A stretch of 64,000 nucleotides of DNA, taken from assembly GCF_032191835.1 (NCBI RefSeq), contig NC_083242.1, positions 38,316,001 through 38,380,000 on the forward strand. The letters run 5' to 3'. The position numbers and the translations under genes are program-made. Shown here in pieces: positions 42,201-64,000 of this stretch; position 1 is the first letter of the stretch; each line of letters begins with the position of its first letter. This stretch comes from Heteronotia binoei (taxonomy: Eukaryota). The notes below the pieces were generated by a model. It was not told the origin of the DNA. It saw only the letters and a list, made by a program, of their open reading frames with translations, and searched no databases.

Positions 42201-45200
42201 CATCCGGATCCTCTGATCTGTCTGGATCCCTGCAGGTATCTGTGAGGGGAACAGAAACGGGGGGGCTCTGTCACGCATCTGCCCACAGACCCTCTTCAGA
42301 GACTTTGCTGACTTCTCCTGGGAGCTGGGCCCGCTGGTGAGGACAAGCTAAAAAAGTTTAGTGATGACTGCAGAAAACAGTGCGGGGAGGGGAGAGACCA
42401 GTGATCCAGTTTGACCTTCTTTGGCAAGCAGGACAAGAGGGGTGGATCCCTTGGTCTGCTTTCTCAGCATCTCTTTCAGGAAACAGTCCCCAACAAGTCT
42501 GGATAAAGGCAGAACCAGTGGCCTCCTCAGCCCTCCCCGCAGCGCCTTGTCTGGTTTCTGCTTCGCTCTGTTGGAGGAAGCGGCTTCCCGTGGCCGCTGC
42601 TACCTACGGTGATGCTGATGGTCTCGTACAGACCAGAAGTGCGGGCCGTCCCCCCCAAGACTGCCTGCGCCACCGAGATGAAGAGGTCTGAATGGATGTC
42701 CGCACCGTCTCTCCTGAACACAGGACTCTTCTGGACCTGAGAAGAACGAGCAGACAGGGTTCTCAGGCAGGGGGGTGAGGAGGGGCGGCACAGGTCACCG
42801 TCGTGTTCTGAAACTGAGTGCCCCACGGCAGTTGCCCAAAGGGGGGCCTACCCTGAAGGTGATGAAGATTTCCTTCTTCCCCACAGGCATGCGAACCGTC
42901 TGCCCGTCCTCCACACCTGAAACCCAACGAGAGGAAAAGGGTCAAGTCTTTGGCCTGAGGCGACCCTTGCCGACTCCTGGCTTTCACGGGCCACCCTCAA
43001 CCCCGTTCGGTTGCACGCAAGGGGGGCTTCTGGCGCTTCTCAGGCCCCGAGGCCTGTGCCTCTTCAGTTCTGCTCAGAGAAGCAGCTTTTAATGACATTT
43101 TATCAGGCTTTCTTGGGGAAGGGGGTTGGTTTTGAGATTTCCATTGCCCTGAGCCACAGGCAAAGCCAGGGCTGTCAGAGGGCCAAACAAGAGATCTGAA
43201 GCTGTCCTCAGTCACGTCGGTTCGTTCCTTCAAGGACAGCCAGCAGCTGAGGGAGCTCTTGGGCACTCCCAACACACAAGCTGCTGCATCCCTCCATGCG
43301 GCCAGCAGTCACCCTCCGGCAGGACATTTTGAGAGGAGGAGGAAGAGGAGCGTTCCTTTCCGGGGAGTGATATTGGAGGCAGACCCCTTTGCAGCTCCTC
43401 AGTCCCACCGCACAGACACCTGCTTGCTGAGACAGCTTTCCAGGGCACCTCCCAAAGGGGACGAAGAGGCCCAGGAGCAAGGAAGGTGCTTCTGGGAGCA
43501 ACCTACTTGCTTACCGCCATTCAGCCCAGGGCCAGAGTTCCCTCCCTGGTGCCTTCTGCAGGGGGTGGCTGCTCTCTCCTCCCTCTGACCCAACCCAGCT
43601 ACTCAGCACCAGCCGCCCCACCAGCACTGACCTGCTGGAACGGGGACCATCACGGTCTTCTTCTGCTTGGTCTGGCCTGTGCCCCGGCATAACCCACAGG
43701 GGGTCGTCATGACAGAGCCTCGGCCGCCACACCTCCGGCACGTCGAGCGCATCACAAAGGGCCCCGTGTTGATCGTCTCCTGGGGAGGGAGAAACAAGCA
43801 CGGGCCGAGTCAGCATCCCCAGGACAGTTTCTTCTTCCACCAGATATGATGTCATCATCCACATCCGCTGACCCCCCAGACCCTCATTCCCAAGGGCAGA
43901 GGCATAACTGGGGTAAGCAAGAAGAGGAGGTCCTCCTGCTGGTAGAAGCGGGGCCTTCTAAGGGGCTGCCCCTCTTGGCTGGCCGACAGGCTTACCATGC
44001 CAGTGCCGTTGCAGTAGTGGCAGTGCTGCACTTTGGTGCCCGGCTCGTGGCCTCGGCCATCGCAGCGCTGGCAGGCGTCGTTGATGTTCACCACGATCTC
44101 CTTGTTCACGCCCTTTGCTGCCTGAGTGAATGTCAGCTCCATGATGTACTGGGGAGGAAGAGAACAAGGGTCACTTGCGTCACCCCGTGGCTCAGGTCAC
44201 GGCCCTTCCTGACGCCCCACCACTTTACATGCAGGGAAGCAAAGAGCAGGAGACGCCGCGTTTCTCATGCCACACTTGGTCACATTCACAGAGGGTGTCG
44301 TAGCAAAGGTACCAAGCAGCAACAGCAGCACCCCAGAACAAAAGCCGTCCTTTCCCCTCTCTTCTCCAGGGACACTCGCCCTGAATTAGGCATCAGTTCT
44401 TCTCACAACCAGCAGAATCTACTTCTGAGTTGAAGCATTAACCAACTAACTGACAAAGGTAGATCTATTATACCTTTTCTCAAGAGGCGCTGGGTTCCAA
44501 AGCTCATGTTTGCTCCAAGGAAGTTCAGGCTTGGAGAGTGCTTAGCTCACCCCGCACTTGCCTACCCCATTTTGCAAAGATGCCCTGGCTATCCTCATGG
44601 CTGTCCCCGCCCCCCAACCTGCCCATCTGGAACCAGCTGGCCAAGGAAAAAGAAACAAGTGGGAGGAGTGGGAAAGGAGTTCGCAGTGGGCAGGCAAAGC
44701 CCCCCCCCCCACCCAGCCTCTGTATTATGAGGCGCTCCACGAGGAGACTCTACAACGTGTCCTGCCCTCAAAAGGGACTTCCGCAACAGGAGTCAGCGCT
44801 CACCTCCTGCGGCTGGTCAAAGACAGTGTGGAAGTCTCCAAAGGGGGACCCGGAAAACTCCCCAAAGATCTTCCGGAAGAGCTCCTCGGGATCCACGGAG
44901 GGCCCTCTGCCCCAGTACTGCTGCCCGGAGCCCGCCGCGCCAGGGTCAAAGCCGGCTGTGCCATAGATGTCGTACTGCTTCCGCTTCACCTCGTCGCTCA
45001 AGACCTGCAAGGAAGGCCACGTTGCCACAGCTTCCTTCTCTAGACTTCTGGGCTGTGAAAACAAGGAAACACCCCCCCTCCCCCCGGACATGGCCTCTCC
45101 CAAGGGGGCCCCTCACCTCATAGGCTTCTGCCAGCTGGGAGAACTTCTCCTTTGCTTTGGGGTCCTCTTTATTGGCATCTGGGTGGTATTTCTTGGCCAG

Positions 45201-48200
45201 CTGAGGGAAGAAAGACTCACTTGCACTGAGGCTTATGGAGGGGGTTTACTTTATGTTAACTGTCCAGATGTGCAATTCAGAGAAGAATACAACGATAAAA
45301 CACACAATTTTGTTCAACAGTAATATCACCACTTTTTAAGACAAACAACAAGAAGAGACTGGATTTATATCCCACCCTTCACTACCTAAAGGAGTCTCAG
45401 AGCATCTTACAATCTCCTTCCCTTCCTCTCCCCACAACAGACACCCTGTGAAGTAAGTGGGGGCGAGGGAGCTCTTGAGAGAACTGCTCTTGAGAGAACA
45501 GCCCTGAGAAAACTTGTGACTGACCCAAGGTCACTCCAGCAGTTACATTTATTTATTTATTATATTTATATCCCGCCTTCCCCTGGCAGGTCAGGGCGGC
45601 TAACAATTAAAACAAAATAAAATTAAAGTGTTACAGTAAAATCACGATAAATTATATGGAGGAGTGGGGAATCAAACCCGGTTCTCCCAGATTAGAGTCT
45701 GTATTTAACCACTTTACCAAACAAAAGCAGCATAATCCAAAGCAAAATAACTTTAACAAAAACAGGAACTTTAAGAAGGAGCCCCAAAGAAAAAAATATC
45801 AGGATAAGAAACATTAATCCACCTATATATAATAATAATAATAACTTTATATTTCTATCCCGCCCTCCCCGCCAAGGCAGGCTCAGGGCGGCTCACAGCA
45901 TAAAAATACATTATACATCAAGTTATACTTATAAAATCATGGTTAAAACAATTTACAGATTATATTAAAATTAACATTAACAATATGGTGCTATAAACAT
46001 TAGATCTTCAATAGAATTCAGTAACTAAAAGCATTTTCAGCGGCACTTCTTAGCTTGTCGTTAGTTGAAGCTACCCACCAAAGCCATCCACTAATTTCTC
46101 CTCTTTCTCTCAACCTGATCAGAGGAGGCATTTTAATCCCCCATTCTCTTTCGCCACACCCTTGGTGTGCTAGCTCCGTCCTTTCAGTGGTGATCAATTT
46201 GTGATGATCGTTGCTTAATATTTTATCCAAAAACAACAGTACAGAACACAGTAAGACCCTCTGAAATATCACAACATTGTCAGCAAGCTTTTGAGTTCAT
46301 CAGAAATGTTCTTCAGGCTGGATATTTAACAAAGAAACAAAAGATTTAAAAAACAAAACCAGGAGTGCCACAACAGAAGAGGGAAAGATGTGAAGCATGA
46401 AAAGTCCAAATCTGTGGGTGGAATTAATGTTTCTTTTTCTTCATTTTAAAATGACGTGAAGGCAGACTTCATTGTAGGAAGCTCCCCCTTATCTCCCAGC
46501 CTAATTATGAGCTTTGAGATGTAAGGTCAGCACTTTCCAGTATTTTAATTGGCCTTAAAAATGGCTTTGGAGGGTTTTTTTATATGGACCAGCATGACTA
46601 CTGGCAATTTCTGTCTGTTTTGCAGAAGATCTTATGTAGCTAAACTTAAAAACAAAACTGGTTTTAAGGTAGAATGATTCTAGCATTATCCTCGGTTATA
46701 AGGACTGTAATGGTTTGTCTCATTTCTCCACAGCTGGGGACAGAAGGTGGCAACCGGGGAGAGGGTTTCAATGCGTCACCCTTTGGAGTGCAGAGTCCCC
46801 ACGGGGCAATCTTCTCACCAGTGCTTTTAACATCGACATGCGCCCTCTCGCCTGGCTGATATGGAGGTTTGGCCTGGAATGTCACCAGGACGCTGATGAC
46901 ACTCAGCTGCATCGGTTGATGGCCAGCTGGCAAAATGCTGGTTCAGACAATCAGGCAGGGGCTGTATCTGGTTGGTTGTAACAGAGCTGGCTGAAACTAA
47001 ATCCATCAAAGACAGAGGTTTCATGGCAGAGAGCTGAGGACACCTCAGGCTGGGATGTCAACTTCCAGTTCTTGACGGTGAGCCACTGGCACCAAGGCCA
47101 CTTGTGAAAAGCTTACGCTCAGACTCAACATGCTTTCGAATGAAGCAAATCACAAAATTAACCCAGTAGACTTTACTAAACTCTAAAATCCTTAGGGAAT
47201 TCAAAGTGTGTGTGTGTGTGTGGGGGGGGAATCCTGACTTTTCCCAGGCCTTCCCATCTCTGGCTGTTCCTCCGAGAGCCGCATGAGAGGCAGCTGACAA
47301 GGTCAAGAAAGCAGAAGCCTGACTTCACACACCTGCCACCCCATACAGAGCGCCCATGAACACAGTCAAAGATCCCCTGGCAACGGCATGAGGAAAATCT
47401 CTAGTTTCACCCTGGGACATCAGGCTTCAATGCCCTCAGTCACTGCAGCCTATACATCCACCCCTTTCAGATAATGAAACAATGTTTAAGACAATTAAAA
47501 AGCAGCAGCAGCAACAGCCACAGTCTTTCCTAATAATCGGTTTCCCGGGCAGCTGAACCCAGCATAGTCCTCAGAAGCTGGCAGTTTTCCTTCTCCCCTT
47601 ACAAAGAAGTTGTTCCCTTCAGCATGGGGTAGGGTGAGATGAAAGGATCCTAGTGCAGCCAGCTGAAAGCACATGGGCAAAGCAGTCCAGAGCTCGCTTC
47701 AGCATCTCTGGAGCTGGGGCAGCTGATGGATGTCTAGGAGGGCTGAGTTCAGTTGACCCTCACCACTCACACACTTCCCCTGCCACCAGTCTGTACCTGT
47801 CCTCCCAGCTGCCAAGAGACACTGAGGAAGGGCATGTATTAGGAATGGAAATGAAAACAAATCAGCCAGTATCATAATGCCCCTGTATAAATAGATGGTG
47901 CGGTCTCATTTGGAATACTGTGTACAATTCTGGTCACCGCACCTCAAAAAGGATATTATAGCATTGGAAAAAGTCCAGAAAAGGGCAACTAGAATGATTA
48001 AACGTTTGGAATACTTTCCCTATGAAGAAAGGTTAAAACACTTGGGGTTCTTTAGCTTGGAGAAATGTCAACTGTGGGATGACATAAGAGGTTTACAAGA
48101 TTATGCATGGGAGAGAGAAGGTAGAGAAAGAAGTTCTTTTTCTCCCTTTCTCACAATACAAGAACTCATGGGCATTCAATGAAATTGCTGAGCAGTCAGG

Positions 48201-50681
48201 TTAAAATGGATAAAAGGAAGTACTTCTTCACCCAAAGGGTGATTAACATGTGGCATTCACTGCCACAGGAGGTGGCGGCGGCTACAAGCATAGCCAGCTT
48301 TAAGAGGGGTTTGGATAAAAATATGGAGCAGAGGTCCATCAGTGGCTATTAGCTATAGCATATTATTGGAACTGTCTGGGGCAGTGATGCTCTGTGTTCT
48401 TGGTGCTTGGGGAGAAAGGGCAAAGTGGAAGGGCTCCAAGCCCCACTTGTGAACCTCCTTTCTTTTCTGGCCACTGTGTGACACAGTGTTGGACTGGATG
48501 GGCCACTGGCCTGATCCAACATGGCTTCTCTTATGTTCTTCTGTGACACAGAGTGTTGGACTGGATGGGCCATTGGCCTGATCCAACAGGGCTTCTCCTA
48601 TGTTCTTATGTGACACAGAGTGTTGGACTGGATGGGCCACTGGCCTGATCCAACATGGCTTCTCTTATGTTCTTCTGTGACACAGAGTGTTGGACTGGAT
48701 GGGCCACTGGCCTTATCCAACATGGCTTCTCTTATGTTCTTCTGTGACACAGAGTGTTGGACTGGATGGGCCATTGGCCTGATCCAACATGGCTTCTTTT
48801 GTGTTCTTATGTGGGTGGTCCACAGTTGGGGCACACTCAGGGGCAATGGGCAGCAGCACTCCCAGCTGCATCCACTGGCCAGTGCTGATGGGAAAAGGGC
48901 ACACAGGTGATGCGGTGGGAGGGCTTGCAAGCAGCAGAACATGTGGGCAGGTGGGAGTGGAAAGGAGAGAGGGAGGGGGCCTGGGCAGAAAATGCCCAGG
49001 GGCACCCAAAACCTAGAACCAGCCCTAGAGCAGTCCCATTACAAATGGGAAGCTGAGGATGAGTAAGAGTAGCCCACCCCAAAGGTCACCTGGTGAGTTC
49101 CTGGAAAAAATTTGGTTTGAACTGGGAACTCCCCAGACCACAACTCATTCTGCTTGCTACAACCCTACAACGATTTTTATTTGTGTGTGTGTCTGCGTGG
49201 AGAAGGAGAGAGAGAACAAGAATCCAGCAACACCTTAAAGACTAACAAAATTTGTGGGAAGGGAGGAAAGGCCGTCCCCTGCCACAAATTTAGCTAGTCT
49301 TTAAGGTGCTACTGGAGTCTTGCTCTTAGATAAACAGGCAGGCAGACATCCCACCTGGACCCAAAGTGCCCCCACCCCCCACGGCTGACTTTCCTATTTT
49401 AAGAGCTAAGACCTGGCCCAATCCTCTTCAGTAAGCATACCTGATAATAGGCCTTCTTGATCTCCTTCTGGCTGGCAGTCCGAGGCACTCCCAAAACCTG
49501 GTAATAATCCTCTTTGGCAGAGGCCGCAGAGCTGGTGTGAAATGAGGCAACATGGAGGAGAGGATGAGGTTGGAACCCTGCAGAAAGCACAAACAGGATG
49601 AGAAGGCAGCCCAGCAAGATTTGTGCACTGAGAGGACAACCGGCCCCTTCAAAATCCAGGCTCAGGGCAGTTGCAAGGCTTCACATAACCCACCTGTGCT
49701 ATCCTCACGTTACAAAGTCCACACTCAGGCCAAGCAGCTGACGCTGTATTTAAAACAACCGTTCTGTACAGCCTGAGACCAAAGCGAGATAACTTATGTC
49801 AGTGATCTCATGGCCCAGGTCCACAGAACACTACTGCTTTCAGCTACCCGGCCAGCTGTTGATAGAGATAAATGTACAGCTCCTTTGCATAAGCTGTGGG
49901 AAGTTCTCTAAGTAAATCTCTACAAAAACCGGTTTCGGAAACCTTTGCTGCTTGAATAGAAGACTGATTTATACCTTCAGATGTTGGTCTGAGGCAGCAG
50001 AACAAAGTCCGAGTCACCTTTAAAACCAGCAATGTTTGGTTCTGGGTTATAAGCTATCGGGTGTATGCCCACATTTCTGTGAAGTGTGTGTGCACCCAAA
50101 AGCTTGCACTCAGAATCAAACATTGCTGGTCTTAAAGGTGCCACTGGACTCAATCTTTACTGATATCTTGGCTTTGTAATTCAAACCGGCGATATGAAAA
50201 AAATGCATTTTCTCCCGGAGGGAGGCTGGCAGGCCATGCCCCTTCCCAATGCAAAGGAAATCTGCAAAGCACCAGCAGCGGCCTCTCCCCCAACCGGCCT
50301 GGAGGAAAACGCCCCTTCCACAGAGGAGGCCGAATGGGGTGTCCTTTAGCAGGCGTCCCCATGAAAAGCTGCAGCCGCTATGGAAGGGAGCGCGCCTATT
50401 CTGTGCAGGGCTGCCCCGTCTCAGCGTCCCCTCCCGGGCAGCCCCGTCCAGACGCAGCTCTTCCTTCCCAGCCCCAGCAGCGCTCTGCACACGCCCAGAG
50501 GCACCCTCGCCGCCGGGCCCGCAGACTCACCGGGGCGGCTGCAGAGCCGCGGCGCCAGGGCCGGGCAGGGCGGGAGAGCCCCAAGCCCCATGCTCACACC
50601 CCGGGCCAGGCGCAGGGCCAGCGGGCACCGCCGCGCCCCCTCGGCCACCCGCAGCCAGCGTGAGGAGCACACGGCAGCCAT
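39245..50681 (-). CDS. DNAJA3: DnaJ homolog subfamily A member 3, mitochondrial (Tid1); long form 462 aa, short form 434 aa
   Basis: Exons 50681-50531, 49577-49441, 45200-45117, 45004-44804, 44148-43996, 43779-43632, 42916-42852, 42736-42608, 42239-42124, 41741-41644, then 40222-40116 (long) or 39267-39245 (short). Arg-rich presequence, J domain with HPD, four CxxCxGxG motifs. Confidence 0.98.
39645..39870 (+). mobile_element. tRNA-derived SINE (family S1) in the last DNAJA3 intron
   Basis: ccagtttggtgtagtggttaagtgtgc head, shared body, gggataaatccaat tail. Confidence 0.8.
40103..40222 (-). CDS. DNAJA3: DNAJA3 alternatively spliced Tid1-L exon
   Basis: Acceptor tgtgtccag|GT, encodes [34 protein letters not shown], then donor GAG|GTAGGC. 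Skipping gives GKRSAGN* from exon 39267-39245. Confidence 0.9.
45357..45722 (-). mobile_element. S1-related SINE interrupted by an L2-type AT-rich tail
   Basis: SINE tail at ~45357 and head (accactttaccaaac) at ~45720, with a tttatatcccgccttccc..gggcggct L2 terminus inserted at ~45545-45655. Confidence 0.65.
46680..47030 (+). mobile_element. Degenerate L2 RT fragment
   Basis: ORF 46715-46981 contains [18 protein letters not shown], a decayed RT domain with YADD-type motif. Confidence 0.7.
47855..48812 (+). mobile_element. CR1 family B 3' fragment ending in five tandem ~67-bp terminal units
   Basis: ORF 47895-48182 ([29 protein letters not shown]); units start gtgacaca at 48478, 48543, 48610, 48677 and 48744. 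Confidence 0.92.
49210..49328. mobile_element. Palindromic Penelope-terminus-derived element
   Basis: agaacaagaatccagcaacaccttaaagactaacaaaatttgtgg...ccacaaatttagctagtctttaaggtgctactggagtcttgctct fold-back; a related palindrome lies at ~50005-50155. Confidence 0.6.
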
Positions 50682-50979: not shown

Positions 50980-51187
50980 TGGGGAGGGACGGTGGCTCAG
51001 TGGTAGAGCATCTGCTTGGTAAGCAGAAGGTTCCAGGTTCAATCCCCGGCATCTGCAAAAAAGGGTCCAGGCAAATAGGTGTGAAAAACCTCCGCTGGAG
51101 ACCCTGGAGAGCCGCTGCCAGTCTGAGAAGACAATACTGACTTTGATGGACCAAGGGTCTGATTCAGTAGAAGGCAGCTTCATATGA
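50980..51187 (+). mobile_element. Full-length tRNA-Ala-derived SINE (S2) nested in a CR1 3' UTR
   Basis: Interrupts the CR1 sequence ...gctaatagccattg|gggacctctgctcc. Confidence 0.75.
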
Positions 51188-55329: not shown

Positions 55330-56290
55330 ATTCACTATTCCAGTATACTACTCCAAAACAGAAATACACTAAAATACAGAGGATATTCTTGATAAGTATA
55401 CATATGTAGGGACTGAATGAGTTTAGCATATGTAATGAGATAAGAAACCAATATCCCTCTTAAGTCTTGGGTGGAGTTTTGTTCCAAGTTTTGTAATGAC
55501 TTACAGTTCAGCAATTTCTCTTTCCAGTTTGTTCCTGGAGTTCCTTTGCAATAAAACAGCCACTTTGAAGTCACCCTTTGAATGTCCTGGAAGGCTGAAG
55601 TGTTGTCTTACAGATTCTCAGTCTTGCAATTCCTAACATCAGATTTGTGTCCATTTTTCCTTTGGCACACTGTTTGTGCTGATGGGCACTGTTGGCATTT
55701 AATGGCATATACAGTGTTAGAAGATGAGCAAGTAAATGAGCCTGAGATGGTGTAGTTGATGTTGTTAGGTTCAGTGATTGTGTTGACTGGGTGTGCTTGG
55801 CAGCAAAGTTGGCATTTGTGTTTACTGCAAGCTCTGGGACCAGTGCAGTGTCCATGTTCAAATGAGATGTAGCATTATTGTGGGTTCAGAGTTGTTTGAG
55901 ATGGGGAGTGATGTGGGCAAGAAAAGGTTTGCCGCCTCTCCCCCAAGTACTTGTGAAAGAGTTGTCATTGTCCAGTAGAGGTTGTAAGGCCTTGATGATG
56001 CATTGAACTGTTTTGAATTGTAAACTGTGTGGTATTCTATTATTGTCTTTTTAGAACCTGTCTTGTACCAGGTTTTCTCTGGATGCCATCCTGGCTTTGT
56101 TAATCTGTTTCCTAACTTGCCTTGGTTTAGCTTTTGAAGTAGACAGGCATTAGGTGGGTTGGTGATAGAACTTGAGTTTTGCTTGTCTGAAATGCACTGT
56201 CATTAAAAAAAAATGTATTATCTGGACTGGATTTATTCTTAGTGCTTGGATTTATCATGCATAGCTGTTTCAAGATTAATTCCTTTGCTG
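55330..56290 (-). mobile_element. Penelope-like element remnant (GIY-YIG endonuclease region)
   Basis: Minus frame reads CSKHKCQLCCQAHPVNTITEPNNINYTISGSFTCSSSNTVYAIKCQQCPS..QRKNGHKSDV; the LYIG part is deleted. Confidence 0.82.
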
Positions 56291-56435
56291 ATTAAAAATG
56301 TTGGTTACTTTGGTAGATTGTTCTGCTTACATATTTCCTTCCTTTCAGTTTTTGTTATTGTGTTTTGATAAACCAGTGCAATTCATGCCAGATAAATGCT
56401 GAAGTCTGTATCTTCTTACTGGTTGAGTGTTAGAC

Positions 56436-56833
56436 TGTCGGAGCGGGAGTAGCAGAGTGAGGGAGATGACTTGCCCGACACAGGGCTTCAGGAAAGAAAA
56501 TCAGGCAGACACGTGCAACTAGTGCCAAAAGGTGTATTAACATATATACACGACAAGTGCTCTCTTGTGCAGTCTATACAATATCACCTCCACGGACAAA
56601 GTGCTTCGCCTAACCACCATCTCACAGGGAGAGACCTGTGTGATGCACACACAGATCATATATAGTCCAAGCAGCCAATCCTGGCCATGCTGACTCAGCA
56701 GATTGCATCACTTGGCTTCTGCCGGCTCAAGCCGGTCTGCTGATCAGGTCACTGTGACCTAGCCTGGCAGCTAGATCACCAGCTGTCATACTGTGGCTGT
56801 CAGACTGGGTTTATGTAGATTCTTGCTCCAACA
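56436..56833 (-). repeat. Copia 3' LTR (398 bp, TG...CA)
   Basis: tgtcggagc...ctccaaca; identical by eye to 59757-60153. Confidence 0.95.
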
Positions 56834-56843
56834 CACCTCCTAA
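56834..56843 (-). promoter_or_regulatory. Polypurine tract
   Basis: Minus strand ...attAGGAGGTG|TGTTGG immediately before the 3' LTR. Confidence 0.7.
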
Positions 56844-56918
56844 TCTATTTAAACCCAGTGCACCAAAACACTTTATACAGTTTACATACATGTCCACCAG
56901 CAACATTACAGTTCATAT

Positions 56919-59579
56919 TTACGTAGCTCGGAACCCTTTCCGGAATTCGTTCAGGAACTCATCATGATTGTAAAACACATCATCGTGTTCCTGTTCAGCC
57001 AGCTCTTTCAGACGCTTGGCTTCAGCCTCCTTCTCCCTAGCCTCGCACTCTGCCACCCAGGCTTTCCATTTCTTAGCCTTTTCTTTTAACATTTCCTCAA
57101 ATCCGGGTGGGTCTGGATTGACAGTCAGAGTGACATAGGGACACTTGTACCTAGCGGGACGTTGGCCTTTGGTGGACCTGGCAGACACCCGTGGCCCTGT
57201 GCTTGGACCAGCTTTGTCTTCTTCGGGTTGCTCTGTTCCCACCTCCTGGGCTGGTTGCTCTGCCCCTGTAATTGGGTGTTGAACCTCCTGACTCTCACAC
57301 TTTACCTCCAGTTCCTGCATTTGAGGCTCTGCCTCCTGACTCTGCTCGTCAGGCTCTGTGCCAGCATTCGGCTCACCTTCTCCAGCCCCACTGGGTGCCA
57401 CCTCCTGGGCTGGAGTTCTGGGCTGCGCTCCAACATCGTTATCGCTACTTGGCAGCAGGACAAATTGTTTCTGCAAGGAGTGCAACCTTGGCCAGCTGCT
57501 TTCTTCATTGAACTGGGCACTCTTGCTAAGTGTTATCTTGCTTTTGCTATTGCAGAAACGATAACACCTGGCCCTTGGCTTGTAGCCCAGAAAAATTAGG
57601 CTCTCTGCCCGGACATCCCCCTCCCCGCTACTCGTGGAGTGGATGCCAACCCGAGCCCGTGACCCAAAGACTTTTAAAGAACTCAAATCTGGGGTCTTGT
57701 TCAACAGTAACCTGTAAGGCACATTTTTCACAGTATTACACCAAACCCTATTTTGCAAAAAAACAGCTGCATGTATGGTTTCTGCCCAATAGGTCATTGG
57801 CAGTTGTGCATCCTCTAACATGCAATACATCACATTCTGCAATACAGCCCCATGCCCATTTTCTCGGGGCGTTGCCGGGTTCGTCAGACGGTGGGCGATG
57901 CCCTTGTTCTCCAGCCAACGTTTCATCTGGTTAGATAAGAATTCCCCCCCTCTGTCGGTTTGTACAGCTAGGAGATTAACCCCTAATTGTCTCTCCACTG
58001 CTTTGACCCACTTGGTGAATGTCCTATACACCTCAGACTTATGCACCATGGTGAAAACCCACGCGTACCTCGTGTGGTCGTCGGTGGCCACCAAGCAGTA
58101 TCTCCTCCCCGACAGACTCTTTGGCAATGGGCCAATAACGTCTAAATGGACTAGTTCCAGGGCTCGTGTGCTTTCCCTTGAGCTTTCTTTAGCAACAGCA
58201 CACGCCTTGCTTTTGGCCTTCTTGCAGACCTGGCAATCCAAGTAACATTTGCAAGGATTTACTTTCAAACTAGGCACAAGCTCCAGGGTTTTCTTTAACG
58301 CCCTAAATCCGCAGTGCCCGAGTCTCCTATGGAGCAAATGTATACAATTATTGTGCACAGGCTCATTCGACACCTGAGCCACCTGGGCACAATCACTCTG
58401 GACCACATACAGTTTACCTTCCCTCTTTCCTGTCACAAGCAACTTTCCCCCACCTCCCAGGATTTTGCAGCAGGTTTTCTCAAATCTCACCTGGTATCCC
58501 TGGTCAAACAGTGTGCTAACACTCAACAGGTTAGACTGCAGTGAGGGTACATACAACACATTTTGCAACATACATTTCAGTGCAGGAAATTCCACATTGC
58601 CTGAGCAAACAGAATTGGCAGTGGTCCCATCAGCCAATCTCACATACTTATGCTCAGGACTGTCAATGTTTTTCAACAACTCCTTCTCGCAGCAGAGATG
58701 GCTCGTTGCCCCGGAGTCTAAAATCCAAGCAGACCCTGTGCTCTCTACTGCAGACGTGACCAGCCGGGTTGCTTCCTCACACGGGCTGGCGGTCCTCCGC
58801 TCTCGCCGCACACGCCCCCGCCTCTTCTCCCTCTCAGGGCAAGCTCGGAGCAGGTGCTGCGACGACCCGCATCCATAGCAGCGACGGACTGCAAACGCAG
58901 TCGGCTCCACTTCCTCCACCTTCGGACGCCTGCCAGCAGCAAAAGCTGGCTCATTCTTGGCTGTCTTCCCGGACACACCGATAACAGCACGCTGCCTGGC
59001 CGACACCCCCGGACAGCTCACGGCCGCAATTCTCTCTTGGAAGTCAAGCAGGTGGGCACAGACGTATTCCATGGTCAGGGTCGCTACGTCCACCGTCTCC
59101 AGAGAAGTTATCAGGGGAGTGTACTCAGGTGGCAACGACGACAGCAAAATGTACACTCTGTCGTCTGGAGCTACAGTCTTGCCTCTTGCCTCCAGCTCAA
59201 CGAAACAGTCCGTTAGCCGTTTGATGTGATCTTTCACACACCCTCCAGCCGGCATAACGGTGCGGAACATCCTCCTTGTCAAGGCCATGAGGGAACCAGC
59301 AGTGGTGCTAACATGCACCGCACTCAACGCGTCCCAGGCAGCCTTGGGAGTGTCCTTCCCTCGCACATAAACCAGCTGGTCATCTCCTATAGATAGCACT
59401 ATGTTGGCCAGTGCCTTATCCGATAACACAGTCTCGGCAGGAGATAAGTCAGCAGGGGGGTTACTCACGAACAGCCATTGCCCTTCACGCTTGAGGTAGT
59501 GTTGCATTCTCAGGCTCCACACCGCGTAGTTGGCTGAGGTGAGCTTCTCAACGGCTACTCCAAGCTGTTGCTGAGCCAT
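56919..59579 (-). CDS. Copia Gag-protease-integrase polyprotein, 886 aa, no RT/RNase H
   Basis: Gag N-terminus KLTSANYAVWSLRM, zinc knuckle CYGCGSSQHLLRAC, protease WILDSGATSHLC, HHCC (HRRLGH..CQVC), integrase core LVHLDVIGP and TDRGGEF; ends in a charged tail and a stop 85 nt before the 3' LTR. Confidence 0.93.
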   Translation of the reverse strand: MAQQQLGVAVEKLTSANYAVWSLRMQHYLKREGQWLFVSNPPADLSPAETVLSDKALANIVLSIGDDQLVYVRGKDTPKAAWDALSAVHVSTTAGSLMALTRRMFRTVMPAGGCVKDHIKRLTDCFVELEARGKTVAPDDRVYILLSSLPPEYTPLITSLETVDVATLTMEYVCAHLLDFQERIAAVSCPGVSARQRAVIGVSGKTAKNEPAFAAGRRPKVEEVEPTAFAVRRCYGCGSSQHLLRACPEREKRRGRVRRERRTASPCEEATRLVTSAVESTGSAWILDSGATSHLCCEKELLKNIDSPEHKYVRLADGTTANSVCSGNVEFPALKCMLQNVLYVPSLQSNLLSVSTLFDQGYQVRFEKTCCKILGGGGKLLVTGKREGKLYVVQSDCAQVAQVSNEPVHNNCIHLLHRRLGHCGFRALKKTLELVPSLKVNPCKCYLDCQVCKKAKSKACAVAKESSRESTRALELVHLDVIGPLPKSLSGRRYCLVATDDHTRYAWVFTMVHKSEVYRTFTKWVKAVERQLGVNLLAVQTDRGGEFLSNQMKRWLENKGIAHRLTNPATPRENGHGAVLQNVMYCMLEDAQLPMTYWAETIHAAVFLQNRVWCNTVKNVPYRLLLNKTPDLSSLKVFGSRARVGIHSTSSGEGDVRAESLIFLGYKPRARCYRFCNSKSKITLSKSAQFNEESSWPRLHSLQKQFVLLPSSDNDVGAQPRTPAQEVAPSGAGEGEPNAGTEPDEQSQEAEPQMQELEVKCESQEVQHPITGAEQPAQEVGTEQPEEDKAGPSTGPRVSARSTKGQRPARYKCPYVTLTVNPDPPGFEEMLKEKAKKWKAWVAECEAREKEAEAKRLKELAEQEHDDVFYNHDEFLNEFRKGFRAT

Positions 59580-59741
59580 CGTGCCGACTCCTCCTCACAG
59601 CTGGCTGCCGACGTCCCTCTGGCTCTCAAACAGAGAACGGTGGTGCTTCTGTGTCCTTCGCCGGCGTTCCTCGCCTCCGGCTCTTTCCAAACTCACAGTC
59701 AGCTCAACTCTCAACTCTCTCCTCCGCGCAGCGGAACCGCC

Positions 59742-59756
59742 CTGGGCCCATAACCC
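59742..59756 (-). promoter_or_regulatory. Primer-binding site complementary to the anticodon arm of tRNA-iMet
   Basis: Plus strand CTGGGCCCATAACCC equals nt 26-40 of the recalled vertebrate tRNA-iMet and directly abuts the 5' LTR; this is the Drosophila copia-type half-tRNA primer. Confidence 0.9.
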
Positions 59757-60153
59757 TGTCGGAGCGGGAGTAGCAGAGTGAGGGAGATGACTTGCCCGAC
59801 ACAGGGCTTCAGGAAAGAAAATCAGGCAGACACGTGCAACTAGTGCCAAAAGGTGTATTAACATATATACACGACAAGTGCTCTCTTGTGCAGTCTATAC
59901 AATATCACCTCCACGGACAAAGTGCTTCGCCTAACCACCATCTCACAGGGAGAGACCTGTGTGATGCACACACAGATCATATATAGTCCAAGCAGCCAAT
60001 CCTGGCCATGCTGACTCAGCAGATTGCATCACTTGGCTTCTGCCGGCTCAAGCCGGTCTGCTGATCAGGTCACTGTGACCTAGCCTGGCAGCTAGATCAC
60101 CAGCTGTCATACTGTGGCTGTCAGACTGGGTTTATGTAGATTCTTGCTCCAAC
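59757..60153 (-). repeat. Copia 5' LTR (outermost base missing)
   Basis: Offset 3321 from the left LTR; matches through ...ctccaac, then runs into duplicated flank sequence. Confidence 0.95.
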
Positions 60154-61619
60154 TTTGGTAGATTGTTCTGCTTACATATTTCCTTCCTTTCAGTTTTTGT
60201 TATTGTGTTTTGATAAACCAGTGCAATTCATGCCAGATAAATGCTGAAGTCTGTATCTTCTTACTGGTTGAGTGTTAGACTTCTGGATGATAAATAAGAA
60301 TGCCAGTCTCCAGGTGGTAGCTGGAGGTCTCCTGCTATTACAAGTGATCTCCAGATGGCAGAGGTCCACCTGGAGAAAATGCCCACTCTGGAAGTTGCTC
60401 TCAGGGCATGATATGATAATGACAACCATTTTTCCCACTATGTCTTCTTGTAATAAAATATTTATCATTTATCTCCATCTTCCTGCCTCTGTTTTGTTGG
60501 CAGGTTATTCCTAATAGACTGTAATCTGCAAAGGTTTTTTGTTGCATCTTTGCAGTCTCTAACATTAGTATCTAAGGCTTTTGATCACTAGCCCATATCT
60601 GTCCTTGCATATGTTTGGTGTCTGTTGGAAAAGAAAGTATAGTCTCTAGTATTTGGATTTTTGATCTTCCAATTGTAATATTTTTGGGAAATTTGCCTTT
60701 GTTTTCTCTCACCTATCTTTTTTTTTTGTTCAATTATCTTTGAAGATCATTATAACTCCTTCTTGAAAATTAAAAATGGATTGGAAAACATTTTCATAAA
60801 ATTTCCCTCTTGCATTGTTTGGGGCTTGTGTTGTTGCTAGTGTGTAAATCTAACCTTTCTGGAAGCCTGATTTTCAAAATCATGTATCTTCCTTCAGAGC
60901 CTCTTAATTCTTCTGTGATACTGATTTGTAAATTATGTCTATCAACCGTGACTCCTTTTTTTCATTATAAATTCTTAACAAAGAGAGCAGAGGAAGGAAG
61001 CCCCGAAGAATCATGGAGGTCGCAGGAAGGGTGGGCAGGCCTGTGCTTCAGCACAGAGTCCTTCAAGAGAGTTTGTCAATGCTGCCTGGCACTGATGTTC
61101 CCTCTAAGCAGAGTTGGTGTGAGCTAGCTCACAGCTTTTTGGAGCCTTTTGTCTTAGCTCAGGAAAAATGGCCCCAGAGCAAGCTAATGCCTGCAGTTGC
61201 AGCAACTCACAACTTTAATGCCAGGAGCTCACAAAGTTGGATTTTTGCTCACAAGGCTCCATGGCTCAGAGGGAGGCAAATGTGGGGGGGCTTGAGCCCT
61301 TCAGTCAGCCCCCCCCCCCAGCTGAGACCTTTGCTGGTCGTGGGGTGGGGGCAGAGGGCGCTGGAAGGGAAGGGAAGGTTGGCGGCTGCAGGAAGGCGGC
61401 GAGTGGAGGAGCAGCTCCTGCCCAGGCTGGGGAGCCCAACCTTGCCTCCAGGGCGCGGCCACCGGCTGCTGCTGCTGCTGCTGCTCTGGCTCCTCCTCCA
61501 GGGCGCCCCGCCCCCTCCCTCCCTCCCGCCGCGGGGCGGGGCTTGCCTGGCGGGGCGGGGCTCCCTCCCTCCCTCTCTGTCTTGGGCGGGCGAGCCCGGA
61601 GAGCCGAGCCGAGCCGAGC

Positions 61620-64000
61620 ATGCACCGCTTCCGAGTGTCCAAGTTCCGGCGCGCCGAGGCCAGGGTGGCCCGCCAGGAGGTGGGTGGGTGGGCAGGCGGG
61701 GGGCACCTGCTGCTGCTGCCGCCTGCTCGCTTCCCCGGGGCTCCCCCGAAGGCAGCCGGGAGGGAGGGAGGGTCGCGCAGCCAGCCAGCCAGCCACGTGG
61801 GGGACGGCCGCGGAGAGCAGCGCCTGGCTGCCCCCTTGGGAGCGCTCGCTGCTTCTTGACGCCCCCGGCCCGTAGCAGGGCGGGGGCGCTTGGTTTGCTC
61901 TCCCGCTGGCAGCTGCCCCGCCCCGCCCCGCCGTGCCTGCAGAGCTCCAGGCGCTCCGGCCCCGAATGCTGGCGCGGGGTGAAGGGCCGTGCCAAAGAGG
62001 CTGCAGATGCCCGGGCAGGGTGCTGGGGGGGGGGGGGGGCGGTGAGGGGCGCAGCAGCCCTGCAGCATCTCCTGGCCGGGAAGGGCTTGGCTCCTTGGAA
62101 AGCAGCCTCTCTTGGCCCGCTGTAATCTCCAGGACGTGCCTGGAGCCCCCGAGCCTCGGAGCTTCCCAAGGCCCACCCAGGGCAAAGCACCTGCTGACAG
62201 GGCCCGGCTGGCCCAAACAGCCCCTGCGCTGGCAATGTCACACGAGGGTGCCCAGTTTGGGGCCCCCAGAAGGCCAGCGCCCTAGACGGTCACCTCCTTT
62301 GCCCAGTGCTGGCCTGTCTCCTGAAGGCAGACTTCTGCCACTTGTGGCCAGTTCCGTCAGCTGCAGATGGGAGAAGCTGCCTATTGCTAGAATTCTTCCT
62401 CAGAAGGCTAACGAAGACACTTCTAGGACTCTAATACCAGCCAATGATCACATGCCAAAGAGGGAGGCTCCAGCAGGGTCTCCTCGAAACAGATTCTCTT
62501 TGTCCTGACGACTCGTTGGGTGCCTCCTGGAGTGTGAAGGGGGTGGGCAGCAGCAGTGAGAAGGCTGTTTGTGTGACAGTGCAGAATGTTCCCTTTTTCT
62601 CTGTGATTTCGCAGAGAAGGAGGAGGTGGTTTCCTTTCATTTCCTCGCCCCTAAATGACTCCTGGATTTCTCAGTGGGATGCAGCAGGGCAGCCTCCCCT
62701 CAAAGCCCGTGTCTCCCTCCCATTCTTCTTCTGTCTGTGGGTTGCAGGACTGGATCCGAGGCATCCATGGCGGCTGCGCTCCTGCTGCTTCTGGGAACCA
62801 CCTCAAAACCAGCTGCCGCTGGATCGTGTTCAGCACAGACTCTGCAGGTGAGCAGTTGGCAAGGCCTGGCCCAGAGACGAGGCCACAGGGCCTCTGGCCT
62901 GACCCGGTGTGACCTGGGGATGCACCTGCATCAGCCTTGCGGTAGGGACCCAGGAAGGCTGTGTGAACACACAAAGCTGCCTGATCTTGAATCAGACCTT
63001 TGGTCCATCCAGGTCAGACTGGCAGCAGCTCACCAGGGTCTAAGGCAGACCTCCTGCCTGGTCCTTTTCTGCTGAAGATTGAGCCAGGGACCTTCTGTGT
63101 GCCAAGCAGAGGCTCTGCAAACGAAAAAATACATAGCTAGCTGCAGCTGCCTTCTACTGAATCAGACCTTTGAGTCCATCACAGTCAGTCTTGTCTACTC
63201 CGACTGGCAGCGGCTCTCCAGGTCTCGGGCAGAGAAGGGTCTTTCACAGCATCTCCTGCCTGGTCCTTTTAACTGGAAATGCCCTTGGGAATTGAACCTA
63301 TTTGTCTTCTAAGCACTCGGAAACTGCCTTAGACTGAAACAGACCTTTTAGTCCTTCAAAGTCAGTCTTGATTACGCAGACAAGCAGTGGCTCTCTAGGG
63401 TTTCAGGCAGAAAAGGATCTTTCCCGTCACCTGCTACCAGATGCTGCTGCTGGGGATCGCACCTGGGACCTTCTGCATGCCAAGCAGAGGCTTTACCTTT
63501 GAGCTACAGCTCCTCCTCAGGTGCCACACTATGAGATTCTGGGGCAGCATGCGAGAGTAGCTGTAGCGTCTCTCTGGGAGTGAGGGGGCTTGGTGTCTTG
63601 TTGCTTGGTAGTAGCAACCACTGGTGGATTGTGTGAGAAGGAAGGCGCTCCCTGGGAGGAAACCCCCACCCTGTTTGCGTGCATCCCCTAGAGCAGGGGT
63701 GGCCAACAGTAGCTCTCCAGATGTTTTTTGCCTACAACTCCCATCAGCCCCAGCCATTGGCCATGCTGGCTGGGGCTGATGGGAGTTGTAGGGAAAAAAA
63801 ACATGTGGAGAGCTACCGTTGGCCACCCCTGCCTTAGAGTGCTGGGGTGGGGTGATCAGCCTGGGTGTCCCGAAGGGCTGCTACAGGGGTGGCCTGTGCT
63901 CTCTGACCTGACTCCTTTCTCTTCCAGGTGTGCTGGGTGTCGTGCCACTGGAAAGCCCAGATGGGGGCCAGAGGCCTGTTTCGCAGCTGCGTTGTCATTC
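61620..64000 (+). CDS. CORO7: Coronin-7, first three coding exons (gene continues beyond the window)
   Basis: Exons 61620-61679 (MHRFRVSKFRRAEARVARQE), 62748-62847 (DWIRGIHGG..NHLKTSC..) and 63928-64000 (GVLGVVPLE..LRCHS); matches the recalled CORO7 N-terminus MNRFRVSKFRH; head-to-head with DNAJA3; CpG island ~61350-62100. Confidence 0.93.
62975..63515 (-). mobile_element. Three tandem S2 SINE copies in CORO7 intron 2
   Basis: Repeated reverse-strand segments ctgaatcagacc...gactggcagcggctctcca...ggaccttctgcatgccaagcagaggctc. Confidence 0.65.
63694..63831. mobile_element. hAT-Charlie-type MITE
   Basis: Near-perfect 138-bp fold-back caggggtggccaac...gttggccacccctg; 8-bp TSD ccctagag/ccttagag (7/8). 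Confidence 0.88.

What the first reader, a model, noticed from the sequence alone, without database searches (positions are those of the whole stretch)
56436..60153. Recently mobilised RT-less Copia that keeps an intact Gag-PR-IN polyprotein
Seen: LTRs identical over ~397 bp, intact PBS and PPT, and an 886-codon stop-free ORF filling the internal region but with no RT or RNase H. It must be reverse-transcribed in trans, yet it keeps its own capsid, protease and integrase scaffold. Non-autonomous LTR elements I recall (TRIM, LARD, TR-GAG, BARE-2) retain other module sets and are mostly from plants, and young Copia elements are uncommon in amniotes. Inference: a parasite/helper pair that co-assembles particles and borrows RT, or a dominant-negative regulator of its autonomous partner.
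Basis: partly seen in the sequence, partly recalled or inferred. Interest (0 to 1): 0.8.

Follow-up and report, generated by a model that had tools for sequence, protein, structure and literature searches.

The report
Crippled young Copia retrotransposon in gecko
A very recently inserted Copia-type jumping gene in a gecko has lost its reverse transcriptase and a key integrase residue, and it sits between two copies of a 130-base stretch of host DNA, so it was probably copied by borrowed enzymes and inserted in an irregular way.

Summary
The listed features are real. Two LTRs (window 56436-56833 and 59757-60153) are identical over 397 nt. There is a PBS, a polypurine tract and an 886-codon ORF on the minus strand (Gag, zinc knuckle, protease, integrase). 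No RT or RNase H remnant exists in any frame. The host is the gecko Heteronotia binoei, and the insertion probably lies in DNAJA3 intron 1.

Two things were missed:
- **Integrase is not intact.** A 4-residue in-frame gap removes the catalytic glutamate of the D,D-35-E triad, which all 11 aligned relatives and the two nearest Podarcis homologues keep.
- **The insertion is irregular.** The flanks carry a perfect 128-130-bp duplication, not 5 bp, and the 5' LTR lacks 1-3 terminal bases. This matches the one-ended integrations described for retroviruses with weak integrase.

Best reading: a non-autonomous deletion derivative copied by enzymes supplied in trans. Whether it belongs to an RT-less family with a helper cannot be tested here, because the nearest database protein is only about 45% identical. 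Copia elements are expected in squamates; a Podarcis relative is full-length with a 5-bp duplication. This is a new member of a known kind, of moderate interest.

The parts
56307..56435 (.). Left copy of the duplicated host stretch (128-130 bp; 1 base ambiguous with the LTR end)
   Evidence: Perfect direct repeat 56307-56436 = 60152-60281. It occurs nowhere else in the window.
56436..56833 (-). 3' LTR, complete (398 nt; TGTTGGAG...CTCCGACA in element orientation)
   Evidence: 100% identical to the other LTR over 397 nt. Terminal inverted repeat TGTTGGAG / TGTCGGAG. Its CA end abuts host DNA.
56834..56846 (-). Polypurine tract AGATTAGGAGGTG
   Evidence: Read directly from the sequence. The Podarcis relative has AGGAGGAG in the same place.
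56919..59579 (-). Single 886-codon ORF: Gag, CCHC knuckle, protease, integrase, linker, short RT-N-terminal stub and tail
56990..57041 (-). Zone of the RT/RNase H deletion junction (about 1.3 kb missing compared with relatives)
   Evidence: Homology to full-length Copia pol ends at ORF residue about 847-862, at the W..A...E motif that precedes RVT_2. No RT/RH remnant downstream.
57492..57701 (-). Integrase C-terminal SH3-like domain
   Evidence: Pfam SH3_retrovirus, residues 627-696, E 3.9e-13.
57852..57857 (-). Site of the 4-codon in-frame gap that removes the integrase catalytic Glu (reads NG|HG)
   Evidence: All 11 aligned relatives have NG[VIL][AS]ER.NR here; the gecko has NG----HGAV. The nearest Podarcis relatives keep A-E. 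Ty1 IN 7z0h and PFV IN 3dlr/3oyk place Val/Ala opposite their catalytic Glu. Translation.
57867..58166 (-). Integrase catalytic core; both Asp residues present
   Evidence: Pfam rve, residues 472-571. D480 and D542 are conserved.
58209..58412 (-). GAG-pre-integrase / HHCC zinc-binding region
   Evidence: Pfam gag_pre-integrs, residues 390-457. H417, H422, C449 and C452 are conserved.
58494..58727 (-). Aspartic protease barrel with the DSGA motif
   Evidence: Pfam Pol_BBD, residues 285-362, E 1.1e-19. D288-S-G-A is conserved.
58839..58880 (-). CCHC zinc knuckle (CX2CX4HX4C)
   Evidence: C234, C237, H242 and C247 are conserved.
59031..59501 (-). Copia-type Gag
   Evidence: Pfam Retrotran_gag_2, residues 27-183, E 2.8e-23.
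59742..59756 (-). Primer binding site GGGTTATGGGCCCAG, with further tRNA-like complementarity down to about 59726
   Evidence: It directly follows the 5' LTR. The Podarcis relative has the same motif at the same position. The match to the anticodon arm of initiator tRNA-Met is from my own recall of that tRNA sequence.
59757..60153 (-). 5' LTR, 1-3 nt short at its outer end (starts (GT)TGGAG instead of TGTTGGAG)
   Evidence: Two bases (60152-60153) are shared with the flank repeat (microhomology).
60154..60281 (.). Right copy of the duplicated host stretch

Best explanation
This is a defective, non-autonomous derivative of a squamate Ty1/copia retrotransposon that entered the Heteronotia binoei germline very recently. 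It probably lies in intron 1 of DNAJA3, on the same strand as the gene.

Shown:
- Its RNA would encode Gag, a zinc knuckle, protease and an integrase-like domain, but no reverse transcriptase or RNase H.
- The integrase has lost the glutamate of its catalytic triad.

Inferred:
- The copy was reverse-transcribed inside particles that held enzymes from an autonomous relative elsewhere in the genome.
- Priming used the 5' part of initiator tRNA-Met.
- Integrase activity in those particles was low or mixed with dead subunits, so only one cDNA end (the CA end of the 3' LTR) was joined in the regular way.
- Host end-joining attached the other end about 130 bp away through 2 bases of microhomology. 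That trimmed 1-3 bases off the LTR and duplicated 128-130 bp of host DNA.
For: - No RT or RNase H in any frame. Homology to full-length pol stops at residue about 847-862.
- The catalytic Glu is missing, while all 11 aligned relatives, the two nearest Podarcis homologues and solved Ty1/PFV integrases have it.
- The LTRs (397 nt) and the flank repeats (130 nt) show no difference at all. Element CpG o/e is 0.52 against 0.33 in the flank. The insertion is therefore recent: under about 1.5-6 Myr at 95% for rates of 0.5-2e-9 per site per year.
- Two independent lesions in an otherwise open ORF, with zero LTR divergence, are more simply explained if at least one was already in the template (inference).
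- Junction anatomy: one canonical CA end, the other end short by 1-3 nt with 2-nt microhomology, and a 128-130-bp host duplication. PMC5041404 describes the same picture for retroviruses with weakened integrase: one normal end, the other often truncated, and host duplications of hundreds of bp.
- The nearest full-length relative has a normal 5-bp duplication, CCCTC, so 130 bp is not a trait of the clade.
- The assembly has a contig N50 of 14.4 Mb and the window has no N, so single reads should span the element.
Against: - Only one copy is available. No helper and no second RT-less copy could be looked for, so mobilisation in trans is inferred and not shown.
- Aberrant integrations also happen at a low rate with normal integrase, so the link to the dead integrase may be coincidence.
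- The lesions could have arisen during the very reverse transcription that made this copy, or after insertion.
- A Glu two residues before the NG motif (PRENG) is shared by the whole subclade. I cannot formally exclude that it substitutes in catalysis.
- Raw reads were not inspected.
Confidence: 0.6

Rival explanations
1. Dead-on-arrival copy. The template came from a fully autonomous element. The roughly 1.3-kb RT/RH deletion, and perhaps the 12-nt integrase deletion, arose by template switching during the single reverse transcription that made this copy. There is no heritable RT-less lineage and no parasite-helper relation.
For: Deletions by template switching are common in retroelement replication (established knowledge). 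Apart from its single lesion the integrase looks normal for its subclade: 3 of 26 core columns deviate and all three are the deletion. That argues against long decay. No other copy is known.
Against: It needs two separate deletions plus an irregular integration in one cycle. With a working integrase in the particle a normal 5-bp duplication would be expected (for the clade norm).
Confidence: 0.2
2. Post-insertion decay. A complete element inserted here and later lost RT/RH and four integrase codons by genomic deletions.
For: Internal deletions of integrated elements do occur.
Against: There are zero substitutions in 2 x 527 bp of LTR plus flank repeat, so little time has passed for two deletions. 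The ORF stays open. It does not explain the irregular junctions.
Confidence: 0.1
3. Assembly artefact. The internal deletion and/or the 130-bp flank duplication were created by the assembler at a repeat or a heterozygous site.
For: Coverage is only 21x. Reads were not seen.
Against: Contig N50 of 14.4 Mb implies long reads that span 4 kb. There is no N. Both junctions fall at or within 3 nt of true LTR ends, which a mis-join would not do. The window is identical to the public record.
Confidence: 0.05
4. Integrase-independent capture. The whole linear cDNA was ligated into a chromosomal break by host end-joining, with no integrase step at either end.
For: The integrase encoded by the element is probably inactive. 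Integrase-independent insertion pathways are documented for Tf1 and HIV-1 (PMC11042837).
Against: The documented Tf1 pathway uses homology to the PBS or PPT primers and mostly targets existing elements, and no such homology is seen at these junctions. One end keeps its exact CA. This rival differs from the best explanation only in the joining step and could be true within it.
Confidence: 0.15

Closest known systems
Full-length squamate Ty1/copia element in Podarcis lilfordi (OX395139.1; L002 5580-10195)
   Same: Same domain order. About 38-48% amino-acid identity in tblastn, and its annotated protein P0228 is 44-46% identical. Same PBS, GGGTTATGGGCCCAG, directly after the LTR. Similar LTR ends (TGTTGG...GACA) and polypurine tract. 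Young, with LTRs 99% identical.
   Different: It has RT and RNase H, keeps the integrase Glu and has a 5-bp target duplication (CCCTC). The gecko element lacks all three. LTRs are 265 nt against 398 nt.
Partly coding non-autonomous LTR retrotransposons of plants (BARE-2, TR-GAG, LARD/TRIM, sugar-beet families with GAG/PROT or degraded RT/RH/INT)
   Same: LTR elements that lack part of the machinery and depend on an autonomous partner. PMC13570524 describes a continuum of retained modules.
   Different: Those are multi-copy families with shown partners. Here there is one copy, in a vertebrate, with Gag-PR-IN kept and RT/RH gone, a module set not listed there.
Mouse IAP I-delta-1 and ETn/MusD (own knowledge, not checked here)
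   Same: Amniote LTR elements with internal deletions that still transpose using proteins from full-length relatives. IAP I-delta-1 keeps an open fused ORF.
   Different: They are class II endogenous retroviruses, not Copia. They are families with many copies and experimental proof of trans-complementation.
Aberrant one-ended retroviral integrations (ASLV end mutants; HIV-1 with weak integrase or sub-optimal inhibitor; PMC5041404)
   Same: One normal viral end, the other end often truncated, and host DNA duplicated over tens to thousands of bp instead of 4-6 bp.
   Different: Those are events in cultured cells with exogenous viruses. This is a natural germline insertion of a retrotransposon.
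Drosophila copia (own knowledge)
   Same: Single ORF with Gag-PR-IN order. Priming by an internal part of initiator tRNA-Met rather than its 3' end.
   Different: Drosophila copia is autonomous and makes 5-bp duplications.

Membership tests
Ty1/copia (Pseudoviridae-type) LTR retrotransposon | Copia-type Gag, protease and integrase, with integrase upstream of where RT lies | tested here: met
   Pfam Retrotran_gag_2, Pol_BBD, gag_pre-integrs, rve and SH3_retrovirus, in that order. Collinear with full-length Copia pol up to the motif before RVT_2.
Ty1/copia (Pseudoviridae-type) LTR retrotransposon | RVT_2-type reverse transcriptase and RNase H | tested here: not met
   Absent in all frames. It is therefore filed as a deletion derivative, not a complete member.
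Ty1/copia (Pseudoviridae-type) LTR retrotransposon | LTRs with TG...CA ends, a PBS after the 5' LTR and a PPT before the 3' LTR | tested here: met
   The 5' LTR outer end is short by 1-3 nt.
Ty1/copia (Pseudoviridae-type) LTR retrotransposon | 5-bp target-site duplication | tested here: not met
   The flanking 5-mers differ. Instead there is a 128-130-bp perfect duplication. The Podarcis relative has 5 bp.
Catalytically competent retroviral-type integrase | Complete D,D-35-E triad | tested here: not met
   Both Asp residues are present and the Glu is deleted.
Established non-autonomous LTR-retrotransposon family (parasite of a helper) | Lacks at least one enzyme needed for its own transposition | tested here: met
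   No RT/RH and an incomplete integrase triad.
Established non-autonomous LTR-retrotransposon family (parasite of a helper) | Several copies at different loci sharing the same deletion junctions | not testable with these tools
   The gecko genome cannot be searched. There is one copy in the window. No close protein in 15 billion and the metagenome scans were empty.
Established non-autonomous LTR-retrotransposon family (parasite of a helper) | An autonomous partner with matching LTR/PBS/packaging region in the same genome | not testable with these tools
   No other Copia sequence in the 64-kb window.
Established non-autonomous LTR-retrotransposon family (parasite of a helper) | Purifying selection on the retained genes (dN/dS below 1 among copies) | not testable with these tools
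   It needs paralogous copies. The conservation test against distant relatives was uninformative once subclade traits were removed.
TR-GAG / TRIM / LARD / BARE-2 | Gag only (TR-GAG); no coding capacity (TRIM, LARD); defective gag with pol retained (BARE-2) | tested here: not met
   The element codes Gag plus PR plus IN and lacks RT/RH.
One-ended (aberrant) integration event | One canonical end, the other end truncated, and a large host duplication | tested here: met
   compared with the description in PMC5041404.
One-ended (aberrant) integration event | The empty allele carries the duplicated stretch once | not testable with these tools
   No second haplotype or population data were reachable; only one place was found for the neighbouring gene.

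The most novel reading that the evidence does not exclude
The copy belongs to an established gecko lineage of Copia elements that has given up RT/RNase H and integrase catalysis but keeps Gag, protease and a non-catalytic integrase-like domain under selection. Its proteins co-assemble with those of an autonomous partner. The dead integrase subunits poison the partner's intasome, so long target duplications from one-ended integration are a recurrent mark of the family. That would make it a natural dominant-negative parasite in an amniote.
Probability: 0.15. Interest if true: 0.65.

Novelty: new member of a known kind. Interest (0 to 1): 0.4.

Why it matters
The insertion shows that Copia elements were active very recently in a gecko germline. 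It is also a natural case in which a retrotransposon with no reverse transcriptase and a broken integrase still reached a new site. The 130-bp duplication with one trimmed LTR end looks like the one-ended integrations so far described mainly in cell-culture work with weakened retroviral integrases. If other copies of the family show the same mark, geckos would offer a natural system for studying how defective elements exploit and interfere with their helpers. The insertion may also serve as a polymorphic marker in an intron of the essential chaperone gene DNAJA3.

Tried and rejected
1. **Looking for other copies or the helper.**
   - The word-indexed protein search gave a best hit of 31-32% identity.
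   - The exhaustive HMMER search of 1.84 billion representatives gave a best hit of 44%, from Podarcis lilfordi.
   - An exact scan of metagenome contigs for LTR end plus PBS found nothing, and a protein-guided metagenome scan found nothing.
2. **Testing for long-term integrase decay.**
   - In a leave-one-out test against 116 relatives, the ORF deviates at 0/14 Gag and 1/21 protease conserved columns, but at 11/32 integrase-core and 10/23 integrase C-terminal columns.
   - I rejected this as evidence of decay. Most deviations are shared with the nearest relatives and are subclade traits.
   - Against the 10 nearest relatives, only the three deleted columns stand out in the core.
3. **Locating the 3' breakpoint of the RT/RH deletion.** The last 25 or so codons and the 86-nt trailer have no significant match to pol C-termini or to the Podarcis 3' end in any frame. 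There is only a loose F...G resemblance, which I did not use.
4. **Reading the integrase gap as a compensated frameshift.** The other frames give no extended similarity (inspection).
5. **A pre-existing tandem repeat as the source of the 130-bp flanks.** The stretch occurs only at the two flanks in the window. This cannot be excluded without an empty allele.
6. **DNAJA3 exon 1.** One frame with a fitting donor has no ATG. A second candidate (ATG at 61621, donor near 61441) fits the phase. It was not checked against the annotated protein.
Full report
**Observation**

- The two LTRs (window 56436-56833 and 59757-60153) are identical over 397 nt.
- In element orientation the LTR reads TGTTGGAG...CTCCGACA, with an 8-nt imperfect terminal inverted repeat.
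- GGGTTATGGGCCCAG follows the 5' LTR directly (rc of 59742-59756). By my recall of vertebrate initiator tRNA-Met, this is the exact complement of its anticodon arm. Further complementarity to the D arm follows.
- The same motif sits at the same place in a Podarcis relative, so this is the clade's primer binding site.
- A purine-rich tract, AGATTAGGAGGTG, directly precedes the 3' LTR.
- One ORF of 886 codons (59579..56919) fills the interior. Its Pfam matches, in order, are Retrotran_gag_2, Pol_BBD, gag_pre-integrs, rve and SH3_retrovirus. There is no RVT_2 or RNase H.
- tblastn with 23 full-length Copia polyproteins finds only the Gag-to-integrase block and no RT/RH remnant in any frame of 56200-60400.
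- Homology to complete polyproteins runs to about residue 847-862. That is the W..A...E motif just ahead of RVT_2. It then stops. About 1.3 kb is missing compared with relatives.

**Host and setting**

- An exon at 28426-29205 (-) is 100% identical to HMOX2 of the gecko Heteronotia binoei.
- Window 17056-41584 is identical to GCA_032191835.1 chromosome CM063344.1.
- That assembly has a contig N50 of 14.4 Mb at 21x coverage, from a diploid female (PMC12811818). The window has no N.
- The annotated gene order is a zf-LITAF-domain gene (CDIP1 by my reading), HMOX2, an NmrA-domain gene (NMRAL1 by my reading) and a DnaJ-domain gene that I read as DNAJA3.
- DNAJA3 J-domain exons lie at about 49.5 and 45.2 kb on the minus strand.
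- A candidate first exon lies in the CpG island (ATG at 61621, donor near 61441) and fits the phase of exon 2.
- The element therefore probably sits in DNAJA3 intron 1, in the sense orientation. This is an inference.

- All 11 relatives in the integrase-core alignment carry NG[VIL][AS]ER.NR. The Glu in that motif lies 35 residues after the second Asp.
- The gecko ORF reads NG----HGAV (translation).
- The nearest relatives (two Podarcis proteins, an ENA full-length element and a Logan cluster) all keep A-E at this spot.
- Ungapped HMMER alignments to solved Ty1 integrase (7z0h) and PFV integrase (3dlr, 3oyk) put Val or Ala opposite their catalytic Glu.
- Both catalytic Asp residues, the HHCC residues, the protease DSGA motif and the CCHC knuckle are present.
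- The ORF therefore encodes Gag, protease and an integrase-like domain that most likely cannot catalyse strand transfer.

I tested whether the integrase has decayed more widely. Against 116 diverse relatives the ORF is an outlier at conserved integrase columns but not at Gag or protease columns. Most of these differences are shared with its nearest relatives, so they are subclade traits. The lesion is discrete.

**Second thing missed: the insertion junctions are irregular**

- The element is flanked by a perfect direct repeat of host DNA, not a 5-bp duplication: 56307-56436 = 60152-60281.
- The length is 128-130 bp, depending on how the 1-2 shared bases at each junction are assigned.
- The 3' LTR keeps its CA end.
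- The 5' LTR begins (GT)TGGAG instead of TGTTGGAG. It has lost 1-3 bases and joins the flank through 2 bases of microhomology.
- The nearest full-length relative, in Podarcis lilfordi, has an ordinary 5-bp duplication, CCCTC.
- PMC5041404 describes the same picture for retroviruses whose integrase is weakened or blocked at one end: one normal junction, the other viral end often truncated, and host duplications that are 'usually much larger' than 5 bp. There, host enzymes join the second end.

**Mechanism**

Shown:
- The copy cannot make RT or RNase H.
- It lacks the integrase Glu.
- It is very young. There are no differences in 397 nt of LTR or 130 nt of flank repeat, and it has a higher CpG content than its surroundings. 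The 95% upper bound on age is roughly 1.5-6 Myr, depending on the rate assumed.
- It was inserted irregularly.

Inferred:
- At least one lesion was already in the template. The RNA was therefore packaged and copied by enzymes from an autonomous relative.
- Low or mixed integrase activity then gave a one-ended integration that host end-joining completed.

I give this reading 0.6. The rivals are:
- a dead-on-arrival copy from an autonomous parent (0.2);
- post-insertion deletions (0.1);
- an assembly artefact (0.05);
- capture of the cDNA with no integrase step at all, which is a variant of the joining step rather than a rival to the whole reading (PMC11042837).

**Comparison with known elements**

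- Copia elements are absent from birds and mammals but present in reptiles (PMC4350176).
- The Podarcis relative has LTRs 99% identical, so a young Copia in a squamate is expected.
- Partly coding non-autonomous LTR elements form a continuum in plants (PMC13570524).
- Deleted but mobile endogenous retroviruses are known in mice (own knowledge).
- This element fails the definitions of TR-GAG, TRIM, LARD and BARE-2. It fits the broad class of internally deleted, non-autonomous LTR retrotransposons.
- Whether it is a family, has a partner or is under selection could not be tested. No second copy is reachable in any collection and the window holds no other Copia sequence.

**Verdict**

The element is a new member of a known kind. 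Its two noteworthy features are the missing integrase Glu and the 130-bp duplication with a trimmed LTR end. Together they make a coherent natural example of defective-element mobilisation with aberrant integration. Interest is moderate, at 0.4.

Noticed in passing
window 49330-49600, 45100-45250 and 61441-61621 (minus strand): DNAJA3 exons lie on both sides of the element. The J-domain exons are at about 49.5 and 45.2 kb. A candidate first exon with a CAG/polyQ run lies in the CpG island at 61.4-61.6 kb. The Copia therefore probably sits in intron 1, in the same orientation as this essential chaperone gene.
   Followed up: partly
window 3262-3738 (+): Decayed reverse-transcriptase fragment of Ty3/gypsy or retrovirus type (YIDDIDIFS motif, several stops). 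It is an old unrelated LTR-element remnant and not a helper for the Copia.
   Followed up: partly
window 50992-51050 (+), 63442-63513 (-), 29795-29851 (+): Three Rfam tRNA matches that ARAGORN does not call as tRNA genes. They are probably tRNA-derived SINE heads.
   Followed up: no
L002 5580-10195 (Podarcis lilfordi OX395139.1): Full-length Copia relative with 265-nt LTRs 99% identical, a 5-bp duplication CCCTC, the same tRNA-iMet-type PBS and two frame changes in pol. The annotated 584-aa 'gene' P0228 is a piece of it.
   Followed up: partly
L003 1-4627 (ENA ERZ27260066 k141_173671): Metagenome contig that is a complete Copia element (1303-aa polyprotein, 35-36% identical to the gecko ORF). 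It has a 141-nt overlap between its ends, which is probably an assembly wrap-around through the LTR. The source organism is unknown.
   Followed up: no
window 59757-60153, element orientation positions 136-175 of the LTR: The LTR carries TGAGTCA (AP-1-like), an inverted CCAAT box and TATATAT within 40 nt, a plausible promoter. There is no AATAAA signal in the LTR.
   Followed up: no
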